Positions 2,252 to 54,424 of a stretch of DNA of 64,000 nt are shown here, piece after piece. Positions within the stretch are counted from its first letter, which is position 1, and the number at the start of each line of letters is the position of its first letter. The position numbers and the translations under genes are program-made. The notes below the pieces were generated by a model that searched no databases, was not told where the DNA came from, and saw only the letters and a program-made list of their open reading frames with translations. The stretch is from Oikopleura dioica. Taxonomy: Eukaryota > Animalia > Chordata. The stretch is from NCBI GenBank assembly GCA_907165135.1, contig OU015568.1, forward strand, positions 15,387,208-15,451,207. Reading direction: 5' to 3'.

Positions 2252-5200
2252 TTAACGTAAGGAAGAAGTATTTAACATTTGTTTTGAGTTCCAATGAGAA
2301 CCTTTTAAAAAGTCAGCCAAAGTGGCGAGATCTAAATTCTGAGAAACTGGGAATAGCGAATTTAAAATTGAACACACTTTTATTTCCAATTTTCCAATTA
2401 GATTCCCGGCTTCAGTAAAAGCTCGAAAATAAGGGGTAATGATCGCATTCGAAAATTGAGTTATTTAACGCGAAAGCTGAGCGAGCGGAAATTGCCGATC
2501 TTACCCGGTTATTTAAAGAATACGCTGCTATTTTCTACCTGCGCTGAAAATAAAGCTGGTTAAATAAGATAAGAAATGATCTGACTAAAAGATAACCGTT
2601 TCATTCTCACTCCCTTATTCTTGCTAAATAAAAGCCAGTGTCTGTATTTTTTTATTTAAAAATGTTCTTTTGAAAAATTTGTTTTCCTCCCCTGAGAAAT
2701 GCGCCGTTTCTTACGGTAGCCAAAACAAAGCGTAAAAAACTCGCGATAAGGATATTTTGATGACAACGAAATTGGCTCCCTTTGGCGCATAATTACCAGC
2801 CGAGCTGAACGTTAGGGTTCTATCGACAGGGCGTTAGGGCACCTGTTGATGCGGGGGACGATTCGCTCGAACGGATGTCGAACTAAAATCGAGCACTAGA
2901 AATCAACGCGAAAGATTGGTATTTGTGAGTCAACAAAGTAGCAACAGCTGGATGCGATTTTCAAGTTCTAAAAATGAGTCAGTGGCAAATGTTACCTGCT
3001 TTCTTGGAAAAAATGAAGAGTGTCTCCGGTTTTCTTTCGATTATTTCATGACTCAAAGGTCTTCCTTAGAAGCATTAGTAGCTTCCGAAATGATTGAATG
3101 CGCTTGCTTCTTTTCAAAAACCAATGACTGCTGGGGAAATCCCCGATCGTAGCGAACCTGGCGGATATCGCTCCGATCTTCTTCCGGATAACCAGCCAGT
3201 AACGTGTTCTTTGAATTAATGTTCTAGCCCCAGAAATACAGGAAAAGCTGAAGTTTTATGGTAAAAAGGGTTCCATTGAAAGTCATTCTAAAGCCGTCAA
3301 TTCTAGCTGTCGCCTATCTCCCAGGATTAGGCGCGAATCAAAGACTCTAAGGCGCTTTTTCCTTACATGTGTCTTTCCAGCTTGAGCAAGATCTCTCCTA
3401 CTTAGTCGTCATTCATTAACATAAACAGCTTCGTAATAGGAAGAAGAGCTGAGGAAGCAGCTCTGAAAATGTTTCGTGGAAATTGAGTGCTCCTTAGACT
3501 AAGGGTTTGTGTTTCCTCCCCAGCAAGTGTTTATTTTGAGCAGTGTTCCGAAAAGACACAGTTATTTTCTCGAAAACCTGGAATTAAAATAGCATCAGGG
3601 CACTTTTAAAGAAGTAGACTCTACTACTGTCTAATTTCGAATGAGGAACTGTAGTTTCTCGTCTAGTTTTCTGAAGAAAAATATAATAAGGGGCCCTCTT
3701 TTTTGTTAATTTCTCATTTTTTTTGGAAAAAAAACTTCGTCTTTTTTGATTTATGCAAGATTTCTTCTGAGCAAGGTTGAGCAATTTTTGCTGCAAGCTA
3801 AGCTTCTGGGTATTTGTTAGGTCGCCTCTCGGCATTATGATTTCATTCCATTGTGAGCTCACTATGTTAGTTTGGATGCCTTTCGAATTTTCGGCCTTGA
3901 TTGAGTGCCATTCTTGGGCGGATGGAAATTCTTCCGCAAAACACTCGGAAGTCTTTGTGTCTTGGCGTGTACCCGAGACGGGCTGCGAAGAATCACCGCG
4001 CATTCCTTTCTCCAACTTTTCCGACTCCGGGTTAGCCATCCCAGCCCATTCAAGAATACTCCAGCTCACTAAGCTTATGCAGTATACAAACCGCCGATTC
4101 GAGCCACTTTCGCTAGAACTACAAATTCTGACTCAACCCCAAATCAAAACCGAATTCGACTCCAGAATCTCAAAAAAAAATCAAAAGCGCTAGAAATTGA
4201 GAATTTTATCATTCAAAAAAGACGAAAAAATGTCCTCAAAATCTTCGAATTTGAAATTTTCTCGAGATAAAACTCGCGAAAATCAAATTGACAGGGAGTG
4301 TTCTTATCTTGCGGCCGCTATCTGTTGCATAATTAGGATTGGTACTGACCTTATCGGCGAAATTCACGGAATAAGGAGCGCCAAGTGGGCAGCTTCCAAA
4401 AGGTTCATTATGTAACACGTCGAGCTCCACGACGCGTTAGATGTATCACCTCTCTCTTTTTTCTCCCGTTTGATGTTGAAATGAAAATTCATTGCAAGTT
4501 CTATTTAGCTAAGCGGCGAAAAACGTGCATTTCTAACGATTCCAAAATATTCCCGAATCTAAGCTAAAATCTTTCATTATTTCGACATAGAAGTTTTTCT
4601 CCTTAGGTTCATCCTAGGTCGTTTAATCTGCTTGTTCTTTGGTTGAACCGGTTAGACCGCCCGCTGGTTGAAAAATTGACAGCTGATCAGACAGAAGATT
4701 TCACAGCGGCTCAAGAATCGATCATTTACGGCGGGAAGCGGCAGCTATTTGTCAGTTCTAGTGGTCAAACCGGGCCCGTTTAGACTTCACATTTCAGCCG
4801 TCACGTTTTTCGCTTTTGAGCTCAATCATAATCTATTCAATCGCCTTCCCCTCCCTTAATTTTGTTTTCTTAAAAGTACAGTAATCAGAAGATGTTTTAT
4901 AATATCAAAGAGCGCGTCAAATTCCGCGATTTGAAATCGCTTATTTTCAAAATAAAATTTCCAACCGCTCCCTACGTTCAACAGCATAGATTTTGGCCGA
5001 TTTAAAAATTAATTTCTCGGAACTTACCGAGCCCCCAAAATGTGCTCAATGACAAGTAAGAGTCTTTATTACAGTCAACTACTCGAATTTCGTCGTTTTT
5101 TTCTTCCGAATAAAATATGGGGCCCCCATTTTTAGGAATTTCTTGAAGACAGCTTAGTCCTTTGAATGGGGACCCCATATTTTAATTTATAAAAGACGCG

Positions 5201-6796
5201 TAGTCCAAGTGATTTCCCTAAGTCGGTTTTCATAACTTCGTTAACACGTTTTTAGGCTACCAACTTTCGTTTATCATTTTTAAAAATGAGATAATTTGTT
5301 TTGCGTAAATGACGATAATGGTAAGCAGTGATCCTTATTTTCCAAAAACACTTCTTATAAAGAAAAGATCGGTGATTACGAATTAGTGTCGATTTTAAGC
5401 AATCATTATCTCCATATTTTTAGTTGATGGAAAAACAAGAATTAATGCCATTGTTTTTGAAATGCGTGTTTTTTGTTGCTCGGGAGCTCGAATTTTGAAA
5501 GTGAAACGGGCTTGCATTGTAAACTCGGCGCATATTTTCAACTGCAACAAGGAAAAAAATGAAAAGAAAGGCAAATTAAGAAGAGCCGCGTTCAACAAAA
5601 ATAAGGGACAGCGAGCTTCATGCGCATATGACGGGTAAAGTACTTGTGAGAGTAAGGGACACCACGCCTCGAATTTCCATATTGCGACAGTCGAACAATC
5701 TTTACACGCTTTCAACGTTTTTGACAAGGGTACAGTCAGCCCTAAAATTGAACTTCATTTTCATAATGACCTAAATTGACAATTTTATTCAAAAGCAAGT
5801 TGTTCTGATAAGGGCGTCACTATGTTAAAGATTTGTAGACTTTTAATTGACCACAAACACAACTTACTTGCTTCCCGCTAAAGATCTTAAGAAGAAAACA
5901 AATGTTTCAATAATTAATTATCTTCGAAAATTAGCACGACGAAAATATTTTCCCAAAATGAAGATATTGTCTGTTTTCACATTTTTAGAGTCGTTAGTTA
6001 GTCCATCCTGACTTTGAAATTTACTCCTACGGCGGCCACGTTTTCGAATCTAGCAACGCTCAAATGACCTGTGCAGCTTTCTGTACATGATTGAATAAAT
6101 CAACGTTAAGGGAATCGACTGATGTAGATTCCAGTGAACGCGGCTGCCCCGTTTCACGGTTCGATTTCGCAGCGTGAGTCCCTTCGAGATCATCCCCCGG
6201 CGACCTTTCCAAAATTCATCCGATCTAGACCAAATCAAGCTTCTACTTCGGTGCACGTCACTTGGAAACGCTTATCACGGCTCACACCATTTCCCGGAAC
6301 TCGCCAAAAGCTTCGATTTCTCCTGAGATTTGGGAGGGAAGTGAGGCTGAAGGAGACAGAAATTCACAATTATTTCTTTTGAATTTCGAATGAAATTCTC
6401 CTGACAAAGCGAAATTCCTCCGATTGAATACTCGTTTTTGATAGTTCAGTGCTCACTGCGTATTACGTTCATTTTTTCGTGAGAAGTGGAAAATTCTAGC
6501 TCTGGGGATTATTTCCGCTTTACACGAAATGGGTTGCCTCGTTGAATCAGGATTAGCATGTGACGCGAATTCGAAATGAAAGACGCGAAACGGGGCCGGA
6601 ATTCGCTCCTCGGTCGGAAAAATGCGGCAAGGCCCAAACCAAACGTTCAGTCAACTCTTGCCTTCGCCGGAAATCTGACGCTTAGATTTTTTCGGGCGAA
6701 TGATTTGGACCGAACCCGCGGAGGAATTTACTTTTTTATATAAGTTCCTTCTAAGAAAATCCGCTTTCAATAAAACGTCAAACCTGAATCCGGCAT

Positions 6797-46142: not shown

Positions 46143-48457
46143 ATGGTAAGGTCATCTTTGCTATTTTTCTTTTATGGGCCCTTAGAAACTATCAACCGCA
46201 ATCCTGACAAGCGTAGCAGCAAGCAGAGTTCGAAATCTGGTAGAAAATCCGTGCTCCCGCTCCCTCCCTGCTCCCTCGACCTGAAAAAAGGGAGCTCCCT
46301 CGTAAAAAACCCGTGCTCCTGCTCCCATTTTTCAAATTTCAAAAATTTTCGAAAGTTTTTCATTTTATTAAGTAAACTCTAAGTAGCAACACCATCGTTG
46401 TATGGTTATTATATAGCGCTGATAAAGAAAGTATAAATAGGCATAATGGCAAATAGGCGAATTTCGTGAATGACTTCAATGTTTTCTTATTAAAATTATA
46501 TAACCAAATCTAGGTCAATTTTAGGCTATTTATTTATATCAAATTTCAGAAGAGACATTTAAAAAATAAATCGAATCAAAAAACGTCTCTTCTAATAAAA
46601 ATCTGAGCAAACACGGTATCTAAATTAATAATTTTGCTTATAATCTGAGAAAAATACATTTTGTTGAAATTATTAAAGTCAAACTAGATGTGATTTTGGC
46701 TAAATATTTATATGAAATTTTAAAAGAGACGTTTATAAATATATCTAGTCAAAAAAACGTCTCTTCTAAGAAAAATACTATAAAGTAAGCGTTTCTCATT
46801 TTTCGGTGCGCAGATAAGATTCTAGACTAAAAATTGTTGATTTTCAAAAAATTTTTTGAAATTGGGAGCAAATTGGGAGCTCCCAATTTACTCCCAACCC
46901 TGGAAACCTGTGCTCCTGCTCCCTCCGTGCTCCCAAAAAAGGGAGCTCCCTTTGGGAGCTCCCAATTTTACTCCCATAGATTTCGGACTCTGGCGACAAG
47001 CCCTTTTCTGGCTGAAAGTCAAGAAGCAAATGCATTTTTGAGCAGAACTCGAGGAGGGGTTTATCGAAGAACTCAAAGACGGTAATTGGGAGCGAGAGTG
47101 CATTGAGGAGGACTGTAACGCAAATGAGGCGTATGAGGTTGTTGATGATGAGGAACAAGGCGAATGATTGTTCGATTTGGTAAATGACTGTAAAGAAAAA
47201 CATAATACAAGGGAGAGTCAAAGCAACTGTGTTGAAAGTGGGATGCCTGCTGTAACTAGAGGCTCTAGTTACTAGAGCTACTGGCTTTCAAACCCCAGTT
47301 AACTGTGGTTCCGATTATTTCAGGCCTGGTGCAGAATGGCCTCTTCAAAATAATCTTGTCGGGGCTCAAAGTGGTACGACAGTCAGAAAATGTGTTTTAT
47401 TTGCTATTTGGATGTTGGAATTAAATATTTTTCTTCCTTTTTAAAACAAGAGACAAGACTCTGTCAAAATAATTTTGGAAAAGATCATTACTTTGCAACC
47501 CTCTTCAACACCGATACCAACCTTCCGGTGTACTCTGCCGTCAAGATTCGGTAAAATTCTCTTCGAAAATTCCTGATCCTAAAATATTAGTCGAGCCAAG
47601 AAAGGTCCAACATATCCGAGACCTGGTAATCCACCAAAGGTGGATGGTGTTTTTAAGTCAATCTGAAGCTACATGTGCGAGGGTCTTTGCGGAACTAACA
47701 CTCCTCCATCTTACACGTCTTTTTATTGCAATCTTGACGAAGTTGAGAGTCCAAATGACTGCGATAAATGGCAACCTCAGGTTCTTTTTTTAAATCTCTT
47801 TGATTCTTATGATAAATACTCAGCACGAAGACTGGGGACATCTCATGCCAAATGCTTTGTTGAACCAAGTCAGAGACGCAGCCAACTCAACCTTCACTCT
47901 CACCAATGTCAGCCCACAACTCGGCGAGTTCAATGAGGGGGCTTGGAATCAGCTTGAATGCATGGTTAGGAAATTCATGGAAGAAGAAATCAACAATGAA
48001 GATTTTGGATCATCGTTGGAACTCACGGGAAAATTCACGTAATGAATGACGAAGAAGACTCTAAGAAGAATAGAATTGATATTCCGGAATTTTACTGGCA
48101 TGCGTTTTGTTACATAGGCATTGGTAAAGAATTATGTCATGCGAGATAACTGTGAATTACGTTGGATAAAGATATCTTTAACCATACTTTACGGGCCCAA
48201 AAACAACAACTATTCATGGGTTTACATGCAAAAGAACGCAAATGACCAAAGACAATCCTCAGGTAGATACGTTCTAACCGGAATTCCTTTCTAAATTTTA
48301 AGGTGATAACTTCATGCCCGTTGAATCCTTCTCCAATACATATTATAACGGAGCGGCCATTTTCGACAGCGTCTGTCAGAAGCCTTCTCGAGGTTTTGGC
48401 AACTGGAATAAGGTCATCACTGATTGGTCTGGCCTCAGACGTCGATGGAACTGCTAG
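46143..48457 (+). pseudogene. Gla domain fused to a DNA/RNA non-specific endonuclease (Endonuclease_NS / ENDOD1-like); disrupted
   Basis: ATG|GTAAG at 46143 (assignment as exon 1 is inferred). Propeptide and Gla: SPFLAESQEANAFLSRTR..FIEELKDGNWERECIEEDCNANEAYE. Nuclease motifs: LCQ, YFATLFNTDTNLPVYSAVKI, DWGHLMPN, STFTLTNVSPQLGEFNEGAWNQLECMVRKF, IDIPEFYWHAFC, IFDSVCQ. Lesions: +G at 47056-59, TGA at 47165, a 16-bp insertion at 47262-77, an extra base at about 47320, and -T at 48003-06. Confidence 0.75.
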
Positions 48458-48528
48458 ATGATTAGACCGTGCAATAAAACAGCTCAAAGCAATATCTTCT
48501 TAATTTTTTTTCTGGAAACTGATCTTAA

Positions 48529-49084
48529 GGGATCCCCCCCACCCCCGATTTCGTCAACTTTGACTTCGAACTACTTTTTTTAGGGCTGAGCTTTTTACCA
48601 GTATGAATGCTCATTTTGAAGCCCGTTTCTTAATGAACAAACTCTTGTATAGAAATTTATTTTCGTAAGGGGAAACATCTTGAAAAAACGGGCTGAAAAC
48701 ATTGATACTCGCGAAAAACACCATTTTGGGCCATTTTCAAAATCGAACTAGTTTTTTCTGCTCTTAGATAGAGCCCTAAATCAATAAAAACTGTCTTCCT
48801 CCATCCCTGATCTACAATCTCTTGTACAGGCATGTGATTCCGTCAAGGATTGTAGAATTTTTGATTTTTACTGATTGATTTACTGGTTAGATATTTTATT
48901 AAATCAATTTTTTCTAAGTAAAATTTTTCGTTAAAATAAGCCATTTTCAAAGCTGTGTCACGGCTTACCACGTGACGGACTCCCTTCGACATAATATATG
49001 AAAATGATCGCCATACAACGGAGATTCCAAAAATATATCACATAAAAGCTCTCGATGATATTATTTAAATCGGGAGGGTATCCC
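48529..49084. mobile_element. TTAA-flanked MITE (Kolobok-like termini)
   Basis: TTAA|GGGATCCCCCCC at the left end and GGGAGGGTATCCC|TTAA at the right end. Confidence 0.65.
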
Positions 49085-49422
49085 TTAAGGAAGTACAGTG
49101 GTGTGTTCAGTTGCTTCACCCCTGACCCGCACTTTTTCTATTGTAGCAAAAGTGAGTGCTGCGTTTCTGCACCTTTTACCCGCTGTCTAGGGGTGCAGCA
49201 ACTCCACACACCACTGTAGGACTAGGATTTGACAATGATGGAATATTAAGAGTTAGGGTGATCTATCTACTGTTCTTTCACTTACATAAAACAAATAATC
49301 AGAGCTTTTTCCTTTTCGGTCAATATTTTGCATCACGAATTCTTTTTCAACGACCAAATAAATTTAATAAATTCTTTAATTCTTTGATTATGGATGATAA
49401 TTTATGAATATAAATGCACATT

Positions 49423-51693
49423 TTAGTCAAGAGCATCTTCGGACAGAGCTAAAGAGATTTCTATAGAAAAGGCTTCGGGGAAAAGATACCATCTTCCAAT
49501 TTTCATGTTTCCGAATTCTTCGTTGACAATTTCCATTGAATATCCATCACCAACAAGAACCGCGGAGCCGTTTTCTTCGAGATTCTCGAAAAATGCTCCG
49601 CCGTAGATGTAATAAGGGTCGGAGACGGGAATTTTGACAACGGGAGCTTCTAGGGGCAGCTCTGATTGAAGAGAAAATTGAGTGTTTTGGAGAATGAAGT
49701 TTCCAGACTCAATGCGGTCGATTGTCATTTGATGGAAAAAGGGTTCCGACTCTTCATCGAATAAGTAGACCCCGGTGACTGTGAGCGGACGGGAGAAAGT
49801 AAACAACGGATGAAGAATAACTATGAGAGATTTTATGAATAAATGATATTTGAGATTATTACCTTTTCTGTAAATGCAGCTCGAGACAATTGGACGTTTT
49901 TCTCGTTCTTTCCCAAGACGTCTGATAATTTCCCAGCCGCTTTCCATTAAATATGTTTGATGACACAGTCGCTGCAGAAGAACTTCGACTTGATTCGTTT
50001 GTTTTTCTTGTTCATCCTTTGTAGGATTCAAATTCAATCCAGACATACTTCTAGGATAAACGATCATCGTCAATGTCGAGAGAATATTTTCGAAAGAGTA
50101 CTGTCTGTAAAACCAATCATCAAAATCAAGGTCTTTCTTGATCGCGTGCCGAAGAAGCGTCGTCACAGATATCGGAACGCAAAGATCACTGCTTTTTTGG
50201 TCAAGAATATTTTTGGTCAAATTTTCCATGTTTAAATTGACGCATTTTGTTATGTTTTCTTTAAGACTTGACATGTTGCAGGATTGGGTCAGATTCGGAT
50301 CGTCTAAGCAAAATGAGGAGTCAGCTTCGTCCAGACAGATGATTTTTGTAATTTCATCAAGAATTAAAAGATTTTTGCTCTCGTGAATGAGATCAGCATT
50401 ACAGCGCTGAAATTTGAAAAAAATAATATCGTTTTTTTTTTCTTACTTTGACAATTTCGTCAATCTTTTTTCTTTCTTCCTCCAAAATTGGCTTATAAAG
50501 AAGCGTCCAAGAAGTTCTCCAATTACAAAACAGAAAATACCAAATATTGTTTGTTCTATAACCATTTCCGTTCGCCAGCTGTAATTGAAAAGTGAATGCA
50601 GGCGAGCCAGCGACTAAATAGTGCTCATTTTAGAGTTTTAAAAAATCACTTACAAAGTATGCTATTTGCATATTTGGACCCTCTTCTGGTGTAGCCCATT
50701 TGTCTGTAGCCTTCTATTCCTGATGTTTCGTTGACCAGGCCAAAATCAATGATTTTTGGGATTCCATCGAGAAGCATAACGTTTGCCATTTTTAAATCTA
50801 AGTGAGTTATTCCGACATCCAACAAATAATTAAATCCCTTTAGAAGGCCCCATCCAATTTTTTTTCTTTGCTCAAGATCAAGTTGATCTTCTTTCAGCAG
50901 GAATCTCAAATCTGTATCTGCCTTTTCCATGATTGTTATCCACCCAGTGCATTCCTCCATTTTTGAGTCCTTTTTATTGAATAACTCGATATTTGCAAAA
51001 TGTTTGATAACGTTTTTATGAAATGGCATCTGATTTTGGTTTTCTGTTTCTTCTTTATTTTCCGCGTGTTCGAAATCTAAGACTGAATAGAAGCCCAAAA
51101 ATCAAAAAGAACAAACCTTCGGCAATGTTTATTTTCCACATAATTGAGTCCAAACCCAAATTATCCGTAAACAGAAAAGGGTCAAAAACTTGAACCCGAA
51201 CCGCAGTTTCTAAACATCCGATCTTATCTCCAAAAACAATCGCCTCTCCTCCCATTGAAATCAATTTAGTTTTCAAAGAACTTCTAAGTTCCCACTCACC
51301 AGTTTCTTCTTTAATATCCCATCGACTGATAAATTTGTTTTTGAGAGACGTATCATTTTCCAAAATCATTTTTTGAGCTGCAGTTATTTTAAAACTTTCT
51401 ATTTTCGTTCTATCTCGGTGATAGATATATCCTCGATCTTCCTCAAAAAGACAAAATTCCCAATGATACGCACTGTTAAATTTCTCGAAGACCATTTTTT
51501 CGATTGTCGAAATCAATCGACACTTCTCCGTCAGCGTCGATGTTCTCTTTAATTGCGGCAAGAAAGAACCAAGCCATGTCTCAATCTCTTTTTTTTCAAG
51601 GTTTTCTTCTTTCAAATCGGCGGAATTGTCGATAAAAAGCCATTTTAAAAGCCAGACGCAAAAGAACGCCGAAAAAAAAATTTCCTCGAGCAT
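49423..51693 (-). CDS. Atypical protein kinase-like domain fused to a C-terminal papain-like (clan CA) cysteine protease domain; intact 5-exon gene, about 702 aa
   Basis: Exons 51693-51117, 51076-50654, 50613-50447, 50406-49863 and 49820-49423 are joined by GT-AG introns of 40, 40, 40 and 42 bp into one open 2109-nt frame. Kinase motifs: SMGGEAIV, TAVRV, HLDLKMANVML, IIDFG. Protease motifs: DQKSSDLCVPIS (Q to C+6) and FHQMTIDRIESGNFILQN (H to N+16). The start codon is uncertain. Confidence 0.85.
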
Positions 51694-51949
51694 TGCTACT
51701 CTATTTCTTCAAATTAAGGAGCTCCTTATTTTTGCAGATGTTATACACGAAAAACTAGTAGCCGTTGCTTAGCATTCCCTTTTTCTTCGAAAAATGCTTA
51801 TTTCTATGGTCCTATTTGTTTTGTGATATTTGCAAGTGTTATAAAAAATCGATAGGAGTCAAACGAAAGGGGGTGTGTTACAGTTATTAACCATAGTTTG
51901 AATATTTCTTACCGCTTTAACTAGCTTAAACGTTTCTAAATAGTTTCTT

Positions 51950-52090
51950 CATGCAAGCTTCATGTCCGGAATAAGGTCATGAATGATTGGGCTGGCTACA
52001 GATGTACATGAAGATGCTAGAAATTTACAAAAGTTTCGTTCAATAAAACGGCTCAATTGATTGACAATATCTTTAAATTTTTCCCGAAAT
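51950..52090 (+). pseudogene. Remnant of the last exon and 3' UTR of a nuclease paralog
   Basis: GGAATAAGGTCATGAATGATTGGGCTGGCTACAGA...GCTAG...CAATAAAACGGCTCAA resembles 48405-48500. Confidence 0.5.
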
Positions 52091-52234
52091 ATTTCTTACA
52101 GATTAATGGTAACATGAAAATAATATTCAGGTTGTCAATAAGGAGTTCTACTGAACTACCACTCAGACAAAACAAATAATCAGAGCTCGGTCCTCTTACA
52201 GATCAATCATTTCAGAGCCTTTTAACTAGAGATC

Positions 52235-52895
52235 AGTACTGAGAGAGGCAATTTTCTGTCAGTTAGATTTTCTGGCAGTTAGACTTTCTGGCAAAGGCGA
52301 AGAGAGTTATCACTAAAATACTATTTTTGGCGAAAATGGTACTAGAAATTAGGAACGTGCAGCAACAACAAAATTTTAGTAAAAAGCACTGTTCTTAGTG
52401 ATAACTCTCTTCAGAGTATTCATACAACCTTCATTTTTTACCCTGCAGGAGAACTGACTATAAGAAACAATTTCCGGCGTCAAACATTAGTCTATCACTT
52501 CTAGAACGAAAACGGCCGGTGACAACGTATTTTCCGGTAACCAGCCGGTAAACCGGTCAATCCTACGAGTTATCAGGAGTTAGACCCATCGTTCGACTCG
52601 TCTTGACGAGCTTAAGAAAACTGCACTTGCAGTTTTTTTACGATTTCCGGCCCCTCAAATAGTTTTTTGAAATCATCCTCAGAAGAATCAGAAGATGAAT
52701 TCCGATCTTTTCTTCTCTCCGTTTTTTACCTTCCAGAATCAATAACTGTATATTCAAAATTAAAAGAGGCGATTTTCTGGAAATTAGATTTTCTGTCATA
52801 TTTGATTTTCTGGCAGTGCCAGAAAATCGCCTTTGCCAGAAAGTCTAACTGCCAGAAAATCTAACTGCCAGAAAATCGCCTCTCTCATCAGTACT
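52235..52895. mobile_element. TIR element with about 65-bp TIRs built from TTTTCTGGCAGTTAG repeats
   Basis: AGTACTGAGAGAGGCAATTTTCTGTCAGTTAG... and ...CTAACTGCCAGAAAATCGCCTCTCTCATCAGTACT. A TA target duplication is plausible. Confidence 0.8.
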
Positions 52896-54424
52896 ATGGT
52901 AGGTTTTCTTTTTTCATAAATTTTTCTTTATCGATTGATAGAAAATTTCCACGACGATTCTCGCAGGAGTCTCAGCAAGTCCATTTCTCGCTGACAGTCA
53001 AGAAGCAAATGCATTTTTGAACAGAACTCGTCGAGCTTGGCAGTTTTTCGAAGAAACCAAAGATGGAAACTGGGAGCGAGAGTGCATCGAAGAGTACTGT
53101 AATGCGAATGAGGCGTTTGAAGTTGTAGATGAAGAAGTGAGAGGAAAGAGGTTGTTTGATTTAGTGACCGAGTGTAAGAAAAAATATCCAGCGACGTAAG
53201 AGCAGGGCGTTTTTCTACCATTTTTTAATGATTATTTAGGGCGAATCAGAGAAAATGTGTCGAAAACGGTCTCCAACCTTCTTGGGGCGAGTGGGGTGAG
53301 TGGTCTGCTTCTTTTGCCACTTGCATCAATCCCGTTACTGGATCCATGGTACAGTTATTTATAGAATTTGTGGACATTTTTTGTCCGCAAGTTTTCTGAA
53401 AAATAGCCACAAATTTGATACAGAGCCCCGAAAAAAATGTCCCAACAATCTTGCTTAAATTATTTTTGAGAAGCAAAAATTGATGATTTTTTTCAAAAAA
53501 TAATAAAAAACGGAACACAAGAAGGAAGTTAAAGACATAAATCTTAACAAAAATTAAGATTATTGACGAAAAAAAGCTCTTTGCATATAAAATTGGCTTC
53601 AATAACTAAAGTTTGACCATTTATTTAGGAGTCAAAGATTTCAATTGACAAAAATGTCCACAAATTTGATACCCTCTCTTTCTAAATGTGTCCCAAGAAA
53701 ACCCCTTAAAATCTAAAAAATGTCCACAAATTTGATGTCCACAAATTCCATAAAAAACTGTACATGAATAAAAAAAAAGGTTGAAAGTAACACCTGTCGC
53801 CTTTCAGAAAAAAACGTTGAAACTGCCAACCTGGAGTTGAATCTCTCACTTGCCAGATCGACGAAATGGCTCGTGGAGCATCTTCAGTTTCTACTAGTGG
53901 CGATAAAGGACAACTCATGCAGTCAGACCTTCAAATATTTCCATTTTTATCTGCTCTTTTCATAGTTGATAGCTCTTGCTAGTCAAAATCCGAGCCTTGC
54001 CAAGCTGAAGAATGCAACCCACTGAAATCCGACTTGGATATTCGCATCAGCAATGGAGACACAATCGTCGCTAGAATGAGCTGGTTTCCGCTCGAAGGAA
54101 TTGTCAGAAACGGAGAGCTGAAGATTTACTAGAGAATCAATAGTGAAGTTTTTGCCAACTACATCGGCCAGGTAACTTCAACAGTTTTTCATCAAAAAAT
54201 GCTCGTTTTTCAAGTCAAAACAATTTTCCTACTACGACACTGCTCCAGCATCTCTCCGAAGCCGTTCAAAAATCACCATCGATGAAAACGGTCGCTGGGC
54301 GGAACTGAGAATCAAGCAAATGACCCCTCAGGACGAAGGAATGATGATTTCGATAGAAATTCACTATGAAGGTTATTTCGATGAACAAGCTGTTGTTGTT
54401 CCCTCTTCTCGACCCGATTACTAA
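52896..54424 (+). pseudogene. Gla domain plus Ig-like domain protein, with an in-frame stop
   Basis: ATG|GTAGG...GATAG| gives MKISTTILAGVSASPFLADSQEANAFLNRTRR-AWQFFEETKDGNWERECIEEYCNANEAFE. Later exons give ARMSWFPL..ELKIY*RIN..RSKITIDENGRWAELRIKQMTPQDEG. The TAG at 54130 occupies a probable Trp position. Linking the exons across the 53.2-53.8 kb intron is inferred. Confidence 0.65.

What the first reader, a model, noticed from the sequence alone, without database searches (positions are those of the whole stretch)
46975..48457. Gla domain fused to a secreted non-specific endonuclease
Seen: a propeptide with Ala-10, Leu-6 and a basic cleavage site, and a Gla motif (EExKDGNWERECIEExC). After removing the lesions it continues in one exon (AVTRATGFQTPVNCGSDYFRPG) into an Endonuclease_NS domain that retains the GH catalytic motif (DWGH) and the NxxPQ...FNxGxW motif. 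Known: Gla domains bind phosphatidylserine membranes in a Ca-dependent way after vitamin K-dependent carboxylation. I know of no Gla-nuclease architecture. Inference: a nuclease targeted to apoptotic or damaged membranes or vesicles. This copy looks dead, but a functional paralog should exist.
Basis: partly seen in the sequence, partly recalled or inferred. Interest (0 to 1): 0.75.

Follow-up and report, generated by a model that had tools for sequence, protein, structure and literature searches.

The report
Broken Gla-tagged secreted nuclease gene
In the Okinawan Oikopleura dioica genome the calcium- and membrane-binding "Gla" head of clotting factors has been fused to a secreted DNA/RNA-cutting enzyme, a combination I found nowhere else, but the copy in this window is a heavily damaged pseudogene and the only other copy is also broken.

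Summary
Pfam finds a Gla domain (47057-47164) and an Endonuclease_NS domain (47824-48003) on the + strand, both above the curated cut-offs.

The fusion is real. In the chr2 paralog, one uninterrupted 147-codon ORF carries the signal peptide, a carboxylase-type propeptide (…ANAFLSRTRR), the Gla domain, a linker and the conserved N-terminus of the nuclease.

Eight true lesions remain:
- a 769-bp TIR element in the signal-peptide exon;
- a 5-bp deletion;
- two TGA stops;
- a frameshifted linker with TAG stops;
- a mutated splice donor;
- a 33-bp deletion that removes the Arg of DRGH ("DWGH" is its scar);
- a 1-bp deletion.

Short-read contigs from two other samples reproduce 47208-48571 exactly but lack the first three lesions.

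The chr2 copy has a TGA and a lost splice acceptor, so no functional paralog was found. dN/dS of 0.25 and conserved exons against diverged introns indicate the fusion worked until recently.

No database protein or paper shows this architecture. This scan had already noted it at the chr2 copy. Expression and the presence of GGCX were not tested.

The parts
46143..46145 (+). Start codon mini-exon (ATG), followed directly by a GTAAGG donor
   Evidence: It is conserved in the chr2 paralog. The same ATG|intron layout occurs in the neighbouring Gla genes.
46146..46187 (+). Intron 1 (42 nt, GTAAGG…TTAG)
   Evidence: The frame of exon 2 is closed just upstream by the TAG of the acceptor, so splicing from the ATG is required.
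46188..46223 (+). Exon 2, first part: signal peptide (M|KLSTAILTSVAA…)
   Evidence: Read from the sequence. It aligns at 91% with L001:5003-5143.
46224..46992 (.). Lesion 1: a 769-bp non-autonomous TIR element inserted in exon 2. It has 15-nt terminal inverted repeats (CAGAGTTCGAAATCT / CAGAGTCCGAAATCT) and an imperfect 8-bp target duplication (GCAGCAAG at 46216-46223, GCGACAAG at 46993-47000).
   Evidence: One search shows the TIRs. One search shows the paralog has the empty site. Searches show X1/X2 contigs joining 46219…|46997 directly. In one search the element's interior has a depth above 1000, and another copy ends exactly at 46992.
46993..47055 (+). Exon 2 continued: carboxylase-recognition propeptide (…SPFLAESQEANAFLSRTR)
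   Evidence: The paralog's version aligns with the human prothrombin propeptide.
47055..47056 (+). Lesion 2: 5-bp deletion (GCCTG) that shifts the propeptide out of frame with the Gla domain. The neighbouring 47053 C>G change turns RTRR into RTRG.
   Evidence: the paralog has GCCTG. (X1/X2 contigs have GCCTG and C at 47053).
47057..47164 (+). Gla domain (GFIEELKDGNWERECIEEDCNANEAYEVVDDEEQGE)
   Evidence: Pfam PF00594, E=1.2e-9. It is 93% identical to the paralog.
47165..47167 (+). Lesion 3: in-frame TGA within the Gla domain (AGA in the paralog and in the X1/X2 contigs)
47168..47256 (+). End of the Gla module: disulfide loop C…C and the start of the linker (LFDLVNDCKEKHNTRESQSNCVESGMPAVT)
   Evidence: In the paralog it aligns with the prothrombin loop CETARTPRDKLAAC.
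47257..47285 (+). Lesion 4: rearranged linker, 11 nt shorter than in the paralog, partly palindromic (CTAGAGGCTCTAG), with in-frame TAG stops and a frameshift
   Evidence: Reproduced exactly in the X1 and X2 contigs.
47277..47386 (+). End of exon 2: family-specific N-terminus of the nuclease (ATGFQTPVNCGSDYFRPGAEWPLQNNLVGAQSGTTV-R)
   Evidence: tblastn with P0010. It aligns with the Gla-less O. dioica nuclease P0156.
47387..47457 (+). Intron 2. Its first base is A here (AA…AG) where the paralog has GA…AG. This is a probable donor lesion (lesion 5). An alternative in-frame GT at 47374 with AG at 47450 exists.
   Evidence: The public model P0159 uses the GA-AG junction.
47458..47550 (+). Exon 3: start of the Endonuclease_NS domain (LCQNNFGKDHYFATLFNTDTNLPVYSAVKI)
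47551..47590 (+). Intron 3 (40 nt, GT…AG)
47591..47780 (+). Exon 4, carrying lesion 6: TGA at 47664-47666 in place of a conserved Trp codon (TGG in L001 and L003)
   Evidence: Reproduced in X1/X2.
47781..47823 (+). Intron 4 (43 nt, GT…AG)
   Evidence: The public model P0001 uses it.
47824..48122 (+). Exon 5: catalytic core. Lesion 7 is a 33-bp deletion between 47833 and 47834 that removes YKGNTQDLSID and the Arg of DRGH, leaving 'DWGH'. TNVSPQ and FNEGAWNQLE are kept. Lesion 8 is a 1-bp deletion between 48003 and 48004 that shifts the frame before WIIVGT.
   Evidence: Pfam PF01223. Alignments. Catalytic positions mapped by alignment of the paralog to Serratia nuclease. Reproduced in X1/X2.
48123..48171 (+). 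Intron 5 (49 nt, non-canonical GG…AG), conserved in the metagenome relative L003. The paralog L001 has lost the AG.
48172..48262 (+). Exon 6 (ISLTILYGPKNNNYSWVYMQKNANDQRQSS-G)
48263..48302 (+). Intron 6 (40 nt, GT…AG)
48303..48457 (+). Exon 7 and the stop codon (…DNFMPVESFSNTYYNGAAIFDSVCQKPSRGFGNWNKVITDWSGLRRRWNC*)
   Evidence: 39% identical to the C-terminus of P0010

Best explanation
Window 46143-48457 (+) is a pseudogene copy of a lineage-specific Oikopleura dioica gene. In that gene the 5' module of a vitamin K-type Gla gene replaced the signal peptide of a secreted Serratia/EndoG-type DNA/RNA non-specific nuclease. The module comprises the promoter-proximal region, an ATG mini-exon, the signal peptide, the carboxylase-recognition propeptide, the Gla domain and its disulfide loop.

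Inferred working of the intact protein:
1. The signal peptide takes it into the ER.
2. The propeptide (Ala -10, Leu -6, Arg -4 and -1) docks the gamma-glutamyl carboxylase, which converts about ten Glu residues to Gla.
3. A furin-type cut after RTRR releases the mature N-terminus (AWGFMEEL…).
4. The Ca2+-loaded Gla domain tethers the enzyme to anionic (phosphatidylserine-exposing) membranes or another Ca-rich surface.
5. The beta-beta-alpha-metal nuclease cuts nucleic acid there, using the His of DRGH as general base, the Asn of TNVSPQ as Mg2+ ligand, and the Glu of WNQLE.

Shown here: the two-domain gene in one reading frame (in the paralog), the exon-intron structure, the eight lesions in this copy, the two lesions in the chr2 copy, and past purifying selection. 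Inferred only: carboxylation, cleavage, membrane binding and nuclease activity. The copy in this window can make no such protein.
For: - Pfam finds both domains above cut-off.
- The paralog L001:5105-5545 is one open 147-aa ORF from signal peptide to nuclease N-terminus. Its propeptide, Gla domain and loop align with human prothrombin (E=4.9e-11).
- The paralog's exon 5 (P0003) aligns with Serratia nuclease and keeps DRGH, N and E. Its Pfam score is 77.7 bits.
- The public model chr2.g5010 (P0159) already joins the Gla domain to the first half of the nuclease.
- The full-length Gla-less relatives P0010 and P0156 guide the seven-exon model.
- The lesions were read from the window-paralog alignment and from the three-way alignment with L003.
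- Window 47208-48571 is reproduced with 0 differences in contigs of two other samples.
- dN/dS between window and paralog is 0.25 (dS 0.51, 397 codons). Exons are 75-91% identical and introns 56%.
- With L003 as outgroup, the window branch has 10 synonymous and 1 non-synonymous change, and the L001 branch 16 and 6.
- A similar SP-propeptide-Gla module with the same ATG|intron layout starts the next gene downstream at both loci.
Against: - No RNA evidence. Two oligo-dT RNA runs with the same species label gave 0 reads. This is no test, because the organism was not shown to be in those runs at 90% likeness or more.
- No intact copy was found anywhere, so function rests on selection signatures alone.
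- GGCX and VKOR were not looked for in this genome, and no paper covers them.
- Lesions 1-3 are missing from the X1/X2 contigs. They may be private to the assembled haplotype or, for the small ones, assembly errors.
- The parsimony counts use only codons where two of the three sequences agree, which favours conserved codons.
Confidence: 0.85

Rival explanations
1. The locus is a live gene. The apparent lesions are introns, non-canonical splicing or assembly errors, and an intact Gla-nuclease is made from this locus in at least some haplotypes.
For: - Five of the frame changes did turn out to be short introns, one of them a non-canonical GG-AG intron conserved in L003.
- Lesions 1-3 are absent from all X1/X2 contigs.
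- Depth arithmetic hints at a further allele or copy that leaves the window's sequence at 47238, just before lesion 4. The 5' contig has depth 75 against 47 downstream in X1, and 171 against 70 in X2.
- The window branch shows 10 synonymous changes to 1 non-synonymous.
Against: - The linker frameshift with TAGs, the TGA at 47664, the 33-bp deletion of catalytic-core residues and the 1-bp deletion all lie inside exons.
- No in-frame splice bypasses them.
- All four are reproduced base for base in short-read contigs of two samples.
Confidence: 0.07
2. These are two separate neighbouring genes, a small Gla protein and a nuclease, as the public annotation has them. The apparent fusion is a reading artefact.
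For: The annotation splits the chr2 locus into g5010 (Gla), g5009 (nuclease) and a third piece. At this locus it calls only a nuclease fragment, PAR.g12831.
Against: - In L001 the Gla domain and the nuclease's conserved N-terminus (VNCGPDYFRPGAEWPLQ, as in Gla-less P0156 and P0010) lie in one ORF with no stop or splice between them.
- g5010 itself runs on into the Endonuclease_NS domain and ends only at the premature TGA.
- g5009 starts at an internal Met inside intron 4/exon 5.
Confidence: 0.03
3. The chimera was born dead. The duplication that placed a Gla 5' module on a nuclease never gave a working protein, and both copies have drifted since.
For: Both known copies are broken. No intact copy, transcript or ortholog with the fusion was found.
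Against: - dN/dS is 0.25 over 397 codons at dS 0.51.
- Exons are far better conserved than introns.
- Both branches show a synonymous excess.
- The lesions of the two copies are all different, so they arose after the duplication.
Confidence: 0.05

Closest known systems
Vitamin K-dependent Gla proteins of vertebrates (prothrombin, factors VII/IX/X, protein C/S, Gas6, PRRG)
   Same: The N-terminal layout is the same: signal peptide, carboxylase-recognition propeptide ending in basic residues, a Gla domain of about 45 residues with the ExxxExC core, then a short disulfide loop. The paralog aligns with human prothrombin across the propeptide, Gla domain and loop.
   Different: What follows the Gla module is a DNA/RNA non-specific nuclease, not EGF/kringle plus a serine protease, laminin-G or a transmembrane segment. 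Position -16 of the propeptide is Leu, with Phe at -17. Carboxylation is untested.
Secreted DNA/RNA non-specific endonucleases (Pfam Endonuclease_NS: Serratia nuclease, EndoG/EXOG; Oikopleura 'Endonuclease' P0156)
   Same: The family and conserved core are the same: DRGH, TNxxPQ and FNxxAWxxLE in the paralog. It shares with the Gla-less O. dioica protein P0156 and the plankton relatives P0010 and P0151-P0155 the N-terminal VNCGxDYFRPGxxWPL, the Cys pattern and the C-terminal tail.
   Different: Those relatives start with a plain signal peptide. Here it is replaced by the SP-propeptide-Gla-linker module. In this window the catalytic Arg and 10 neighbouring residues are deleted and the ORF is broken eight times.
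The chr2 copy of the same fusion (OKI2018_I69 chr2 g5010+g5009; earlier scan note s1-409162)
   Same: The gene, the seven-exon layout and the two-gene block (Gla-nuclease followed by a Gla/TSP1-like gene) are all the same. DNA identity is 76% overall and 91% in exon 2.
   Different: chr2 has only two lesions: TGA in exon 4 and AG>AC at the exon 6 acceptor. This PAR copy has eight different ones, plus 4.4 kb of extra DNA between the two Gla genes.

Membership tests
Gla domain / vitamin K-dependent protein | Sequence match to the Gla domain profile (PF00594) above the curated threshold | tested here: met
   38.6 bits against a cut-off of 27 in the window. 38.4 bits in the paralog.
Gla domain / vitamin K-dependent protein | Signal peptide plus a carboxylase-recognition propeptide (hydrophobic at -16, Ala -10, Leu -6, Arg -4/-1) directly before the Gla domain | tested here: met
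   The paralog has KLSTVILTSVAAS-SFLAESQEANAFLSRTRR|AWGFMEEL, which aligns with the prothrombin propeptide. In the window the element insertion, the R>G change and the 5-bp deletion disrupt it.
Gla domain / vitamin K-dependent protein | Glu residues actually gamma-carboxylated; GGCX and VKOR present in the organism | not tested
   No GGCX or VKOR sequence was available by reference. No paper on Oikopleura GGCX or VKOR was found. The only indirect hint is that the propeptide is conserved between the diverged lineages P0160 and P0161.
Gla domain / vitamin K-dependent protein | Ca2+-dependent binding to anionic phospholipid | not testable with these tools
   Needs protein biochemistry.
DNA/RNA non-specific endonuclease (Endonuclease_NS, beta-beta-alpha-metal) | Sequence match to PF01223 above the curated threshold | tested here: met
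   Window exon 5 scores 46 bits against a cut-off of 23. Paralog exon 5 scores 77.7 bits.
DNA/RNA non-specific endonuclease (Endonuclease_NS, beta-beta-alpha-metal) | Catalytic DRGH (His general base, Arg), metal-binding Asn and the Glu of the WxxLE helix | tested here: not met
   Window: His, Asn and Glu are kept, but a 33-bp deletion removes the Arg and the preceding strand, leaving DWGH. The chr2 paralog and L003 keep all of them.
DNA/RNA non-specific endonuclease (Endonuclease_NS, beta-beta-alpha-metal) | Uninterrupted reading frame over the domain | tested here: not met
   Window: TGA at 47664 and a 1-bp deletion at 48003/48004. Paralog: TGA in exon 4 and a lost exon 6 acceptor.

The most novel reading that the evidence does not exclude
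An intact Gla-nuclease still exists in nature, either as an allele in Okinawan O. dioica or as the ortholog in a sister lineage. For the allele, the X1/X2 haplotype lacks the three 5' lesions, and read depth hints at a form that diverges just before the linker lesion. For the ortholog, the metagenome contig L003 carries an intact-looking, closely related nuclease. Such a protein would be a vitamin K-dependent nuclease, an enzyme class never seen with a Gla membrane anchor. It could plausibly clear DNA or RNA from phosphatidylserine-exposing dying cells, vesicles or prey membranes.
Probability: 0.25. Interest if true: 0.7.

Novelty: new variant of a known kind. Interest (0 to 1): 0.45.

Why it matters
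Outside vertebrate clotting and the Gas6/protein S/PRRG proteins, few uses of the Gla module are known. A Gla head on a nuclease would be a new way to aim a nucleic-acid-degrading enzyme at calcium-binding or phosphatidylserine-exposing surfaces. It would also show that in Oikopleura the Gla 5' module behaves as a mobile "address label" copied onto unrelated secreted proteins. Other notes of this scan list Gla-ZP, Gla-kelch, Gla-PLA2-like and Gla-kinase genes in the same genome; I did not test those.

The pair of independently broken copies, with clear past constraint, also gives a dated example of birth, duplication and death of a chimeric gene. The value of this particular window is limited, because it holds the more decayed copy and the architecture was already reported from the chr2 copy.

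Tried and rejected
- **RNA reads.** Two oligo-dT runs with the same species label gave 0 reads on 46800-48600. This is no test of expression, because the organism was not shown to be in those runs.
- **Search for the fusion elsewhere.**
  - phmmer of the 80-aa catalytic exon against 1.84 billion representatives gave 195 hits. None of the best 150 has a Gla motif or matches a Gla HMM.
  - A word search with the full-length relative P0010 (length range 177-563 aa) gave 10 hits, all nuclease only.
  - A word search with the paralog's exon 2 ORF gave only OKI g5010, the downstream Gla gene and its ortholog.
  - Of two JGI metagenome scans, one found nothing. The other found only L005, the ortholog of the downstream Gla/TSP1-like gene, with no nuclease in the 1.6 kb upstream.
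- **Clusters.** P0001, P0003, P0159 and P0006 are all singletons.
- **Papers.** Nothing was found on Gla plus nuclease, or on Oikopleura GGCX or VKOR.
- **Splice bypass.** I looked for in-frame splices that would skip the linker stops and found none.
- **Joined model.** dN/dS was summed over per-exon codon blocks.
Full report
**What is there**

Three-frame translation of 46900-48520 shows, on the + strand:
- a propeptide-like stretch (…SPFLAESQEANAFLSRTR);
- a Gla motif (GFIEELKDGNWERECIEEDCNANEAYEVVDDEEQGE);
- pieces of a non-specific nuclease further on.

Pfam confirms both domains above its curated cut-offs. Gla PF00594 scores E=1.2e-9 on 47048-47164, and Endonuclease_NS PF01223 scores E=6.7e-12 on 47800-48039.

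**Source**

Exact look-ups place the window on OU015568.1 of assembly GCA_907165135.1, which is Oikopleura dioica OKI2018_I69, 'PAR'. The public annotation calls only a 108-aa fragment here (PAR.g12831, P0001). I tested its claims myself, as described below.

**The paralog proves the fusion**

A phmmer search of the catalytic exon against 1.84 billion representatives found P0003, 83% identical. Its locus is L001 on chr2 (OU015567.1). L001 aligns with the window over the whole gene, at 76% DNA identity.

In L001, positions 5105-5545 form one uninterrupted 147-codon ORF: KLSTVILTSVAAS-SFLAESQEANAFLSRTRR-AWGFMEELKDGNWERECIEEDC…DCKEKHNTRESQSNC…linker…TPVNCGPDYFRPGAEWPLQNMLVGAQSGKTVR.
- The first 95 residues align with human prothrombin across the propeptide, Gla domain and disulfide loop (E=4.9e-11).
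- The last 35 residues are the conserved mature N-terminus of the Gla-less Oikopleura-type secreted nucleases P0156 and P0010.

The Gla module and the nuclease are therefore in one exon and one frame. The public model chr2.g5010 (P0159) runs on by splicing into the Endonuclease_NS domain and stops only at a premature TGA.

**Gene model in the window**

The model was guided by P0010, P0156, the paralog and the metagenome relative L003.

| Feature | Coordinates | Note |
|---|---|---|
| Exon 1 | 46143-46145 | ATG only |
| Intron 1 | 46146-46187 | |
| Exon 2 | 46188-47386 | split by an inserted element |
| Intron 2 | 47387-47457 | |
| Exon 3 | 47458-47550 | |
| Intron 3 | 47551-47590 | |
| Exon 4 | 47591-47780 | |
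| Intron 4 | 47781-47823 | |
| Exon 5 | 47824-48122 | |
| Intron 5 | 48123-48171 | non-canonical GG…AG, conserved in L003 |
| Exon 6 | 48172-48262 | |
| Intron 6 | 48263-48302 | |
| Exon 7 | 48303-48457 | |

The exons were never joined for a search. All searches were exon by exon, by reference.

**True lesions of this copy**

1. A 769-bp TIR element at 46224-46992, with 15-nt inverted ends and an imperfect 8-bp target duplication, sits in the signal-peptide part of exon 2. The paralog and the X1/X2 contigs have the empty site.
2. A 5-bp deletion (GCCTG) after 47055, plus C>G at 47053, destroys RTRR and shifts the frame.
3. TGA at 47165-47167, where the other sequences have AGA.
4. The linker at 47257-47285 is rearranged, 11 nt shorter, frameshifted and carries TAG stops.
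5. The first base of intron 2 is A instead of G.
6. TGA at 47664-47666 replaces a conserved Trp codon.
7. A 33-bp deletion at 47833/47834 removes YKGNTQDLSID and the Arg of DRGH. 'DWGH' is the scar of this deletion.
8. A 1-bp deletion at 48003/48004 lies before WIIVGT.

These were read.

**Independent DNA**

Contigs of two other samples with the same species label (X1, X2) reproduce 47208-48571 with zero differences. Lesions 4 and 6-8 are therefore not long-read errors.

Over 46997-47180 the same samples carry a different version. It has no element, it has GCCTG, and it has AGA instead of TGA. It matches the window upstream (the 30-mer at 46190-46219 is exact) and from 47180 onward, and it resembles the paralog only at 47053-47165. 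Lesions 1-3 are therefore either private to the assembled haplotype or, for the small ones, assembly errors.

Contig depths hint at one more form that leaves the window's sequence at 47238. The 5' contig has depth 75 against 47 downstream in X1, and 171 against 70 in X2. RNA runs gave no reads, which is no test.

**The other copy is also broken**

L001 has TGA in exon 4 (ECD*WQPQ; the window has AAA and L003 has CAC). It has also lost the AG acceptor of exon 6 (…CGAC|TTATC against …AAAG|ATATC in the window and …AAAG|ATATC in L003), with no alternative in-frame AG. It keeps DRGH, the metal-binding Asn and the Glu, as mapped by alignment with Serratia nuclease. 'A functional paralog should exist' is not borne out in this assembly.

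**Was it ever functional?**

- Between the two copies dN/dS is 0.25 (dS 0.51, dN 0.13, 397 codons). Exons are 75-91% identical and introns 56%.
- With L003 as outgroup, single-step codon changes are 10 synonymous to 1 non-synonymous on the window branch, and 16 to 6 on the chr2 branch.
- All lesions differ between the copies.

The fusion was therefore under purifying selection after the duplication, and both copies died recently and independently.

**Origin**

At both loci the next gene downstream is an intact Gla/TSP1-like gene (window about 52896-54424, PAR.g12832, P0160; L001 6923-8038). Its signal-propeptide-Gla module is 73-77% identical to that of the fusion, and it has the same ATG|42-nt-intron start and upstream motif. 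The simplest reading is that a copy of that 5' module was placed on a neighbouring secreted nuclease gene, and the two-gene block was later duplicated between chr2 and PAR. In a metagenome contig of another O. dioica lineage (L005), the 1.6 kb upstream of the orthologous Gla gene holds no nuclease. This is weak evidence, given how scrambled these genomes are.

**Novelty**

No Gla module occurs in any of the nuclease-family proteins fetched, apart from g5010 itself. No fused protein turned up in the length range 177-563 aa. No paper in the library combines the two domains. O. dioica is known to have Gla proteins (PMC9643190). The architecture looks new, but it was already flagged by this scan at the chr2 copy, and here it is a pseudogene.

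**Mechanism (inferred)**

The intact protein would have worked as follows:
1. ER entry through the signal peptide.
2. Propeptide-guided gamma-carboxylation.
3. A furin-type cut after RTRR.
4. Ca2+-dependent tethering through the Gla domain.
5. Mg2+-dependent non-specific cleavage by the beta-beta-alpha-metal site.

Carboxylation, the presence of GGCX/VKOR, membrane binding and nuclease activity are all untested.

**Verdict**

This is a new variant of known kinds. Interest is moderate, because both copies are dead and this is the worse of the two.

Noticed in passing
window 46224-46992: A 769-bp non-autonomous TIR element with 15-nt inverted ends and an 8-bp imperfect target duplication (hAT-like length). 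Its interior, and the sequence right after the gene (48508-48600), have contig depths above 1000 in X1/X2. That marks a very high-copy MITE family in this genome. The insertion is polymorphic, because X1/X2 have the empty site.
   Followed up: partly
window 52896-54424 (+); L001 6923-8038; L005 1700-2840: An intact Gla gene (PAR.g12832, P0160) lies downstream: signal peptide, propeptide, Gla domain, then a WGEWxEWS (thrombospondin type 1-like) stretch. It has a chr2 paralog and an ortholog in a JGI marine metagenome contig, with the propeptide conserved across lineages.
   Followed up: partly
window 48458-52895: On chr2 the Gla-nuclease stop and the next Gla gene's ATG are about 235 bp apart. 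In this window they are 4.4 kb apart. The extra DNA holds the minus-strand kinase-like and papain-like ORFs (49423-51693) that another first-stage note treats as inserted cargo.
   Followed up: no
window 48123-48171; L003 629-667; L001 5548-5629: Non-canonical introns are needed to keep the frame. A GG…AG intron is conserved between the window and a metagenome relative. A GA…AG intron in the chr2 copy is the one used by the public gene model.
   Followed up: partly
window 47257-47285: The broken linker contains a near-palindrome (CTAGAGGCTCTAG…CTAGAGCTAC). It looks like a small duplication or a transposon-excision footprint rather than simple point decay.
   Followed up: no
window 47164-47165 and 46218-46219 vs 46995-46996: Two differences are swaps of adjacent bases: TA to AT, which creates the TGA, and AG to GA between the two target-duplication copies. 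This could reflect a mutational quirk or a consensus error of the long-read assembly.
   Followed up: no
L003 (ENA metagenome contig, 769 bp): An intact-looking close relative of the nuclease part, 75% identical in exon 5, with DRGH, the conserved Trp and no frameshift. It is probably the ortholog in another O. dioica lineage. The contig is too short to show whether a Gla exon precedes it.
   Followed up: partly
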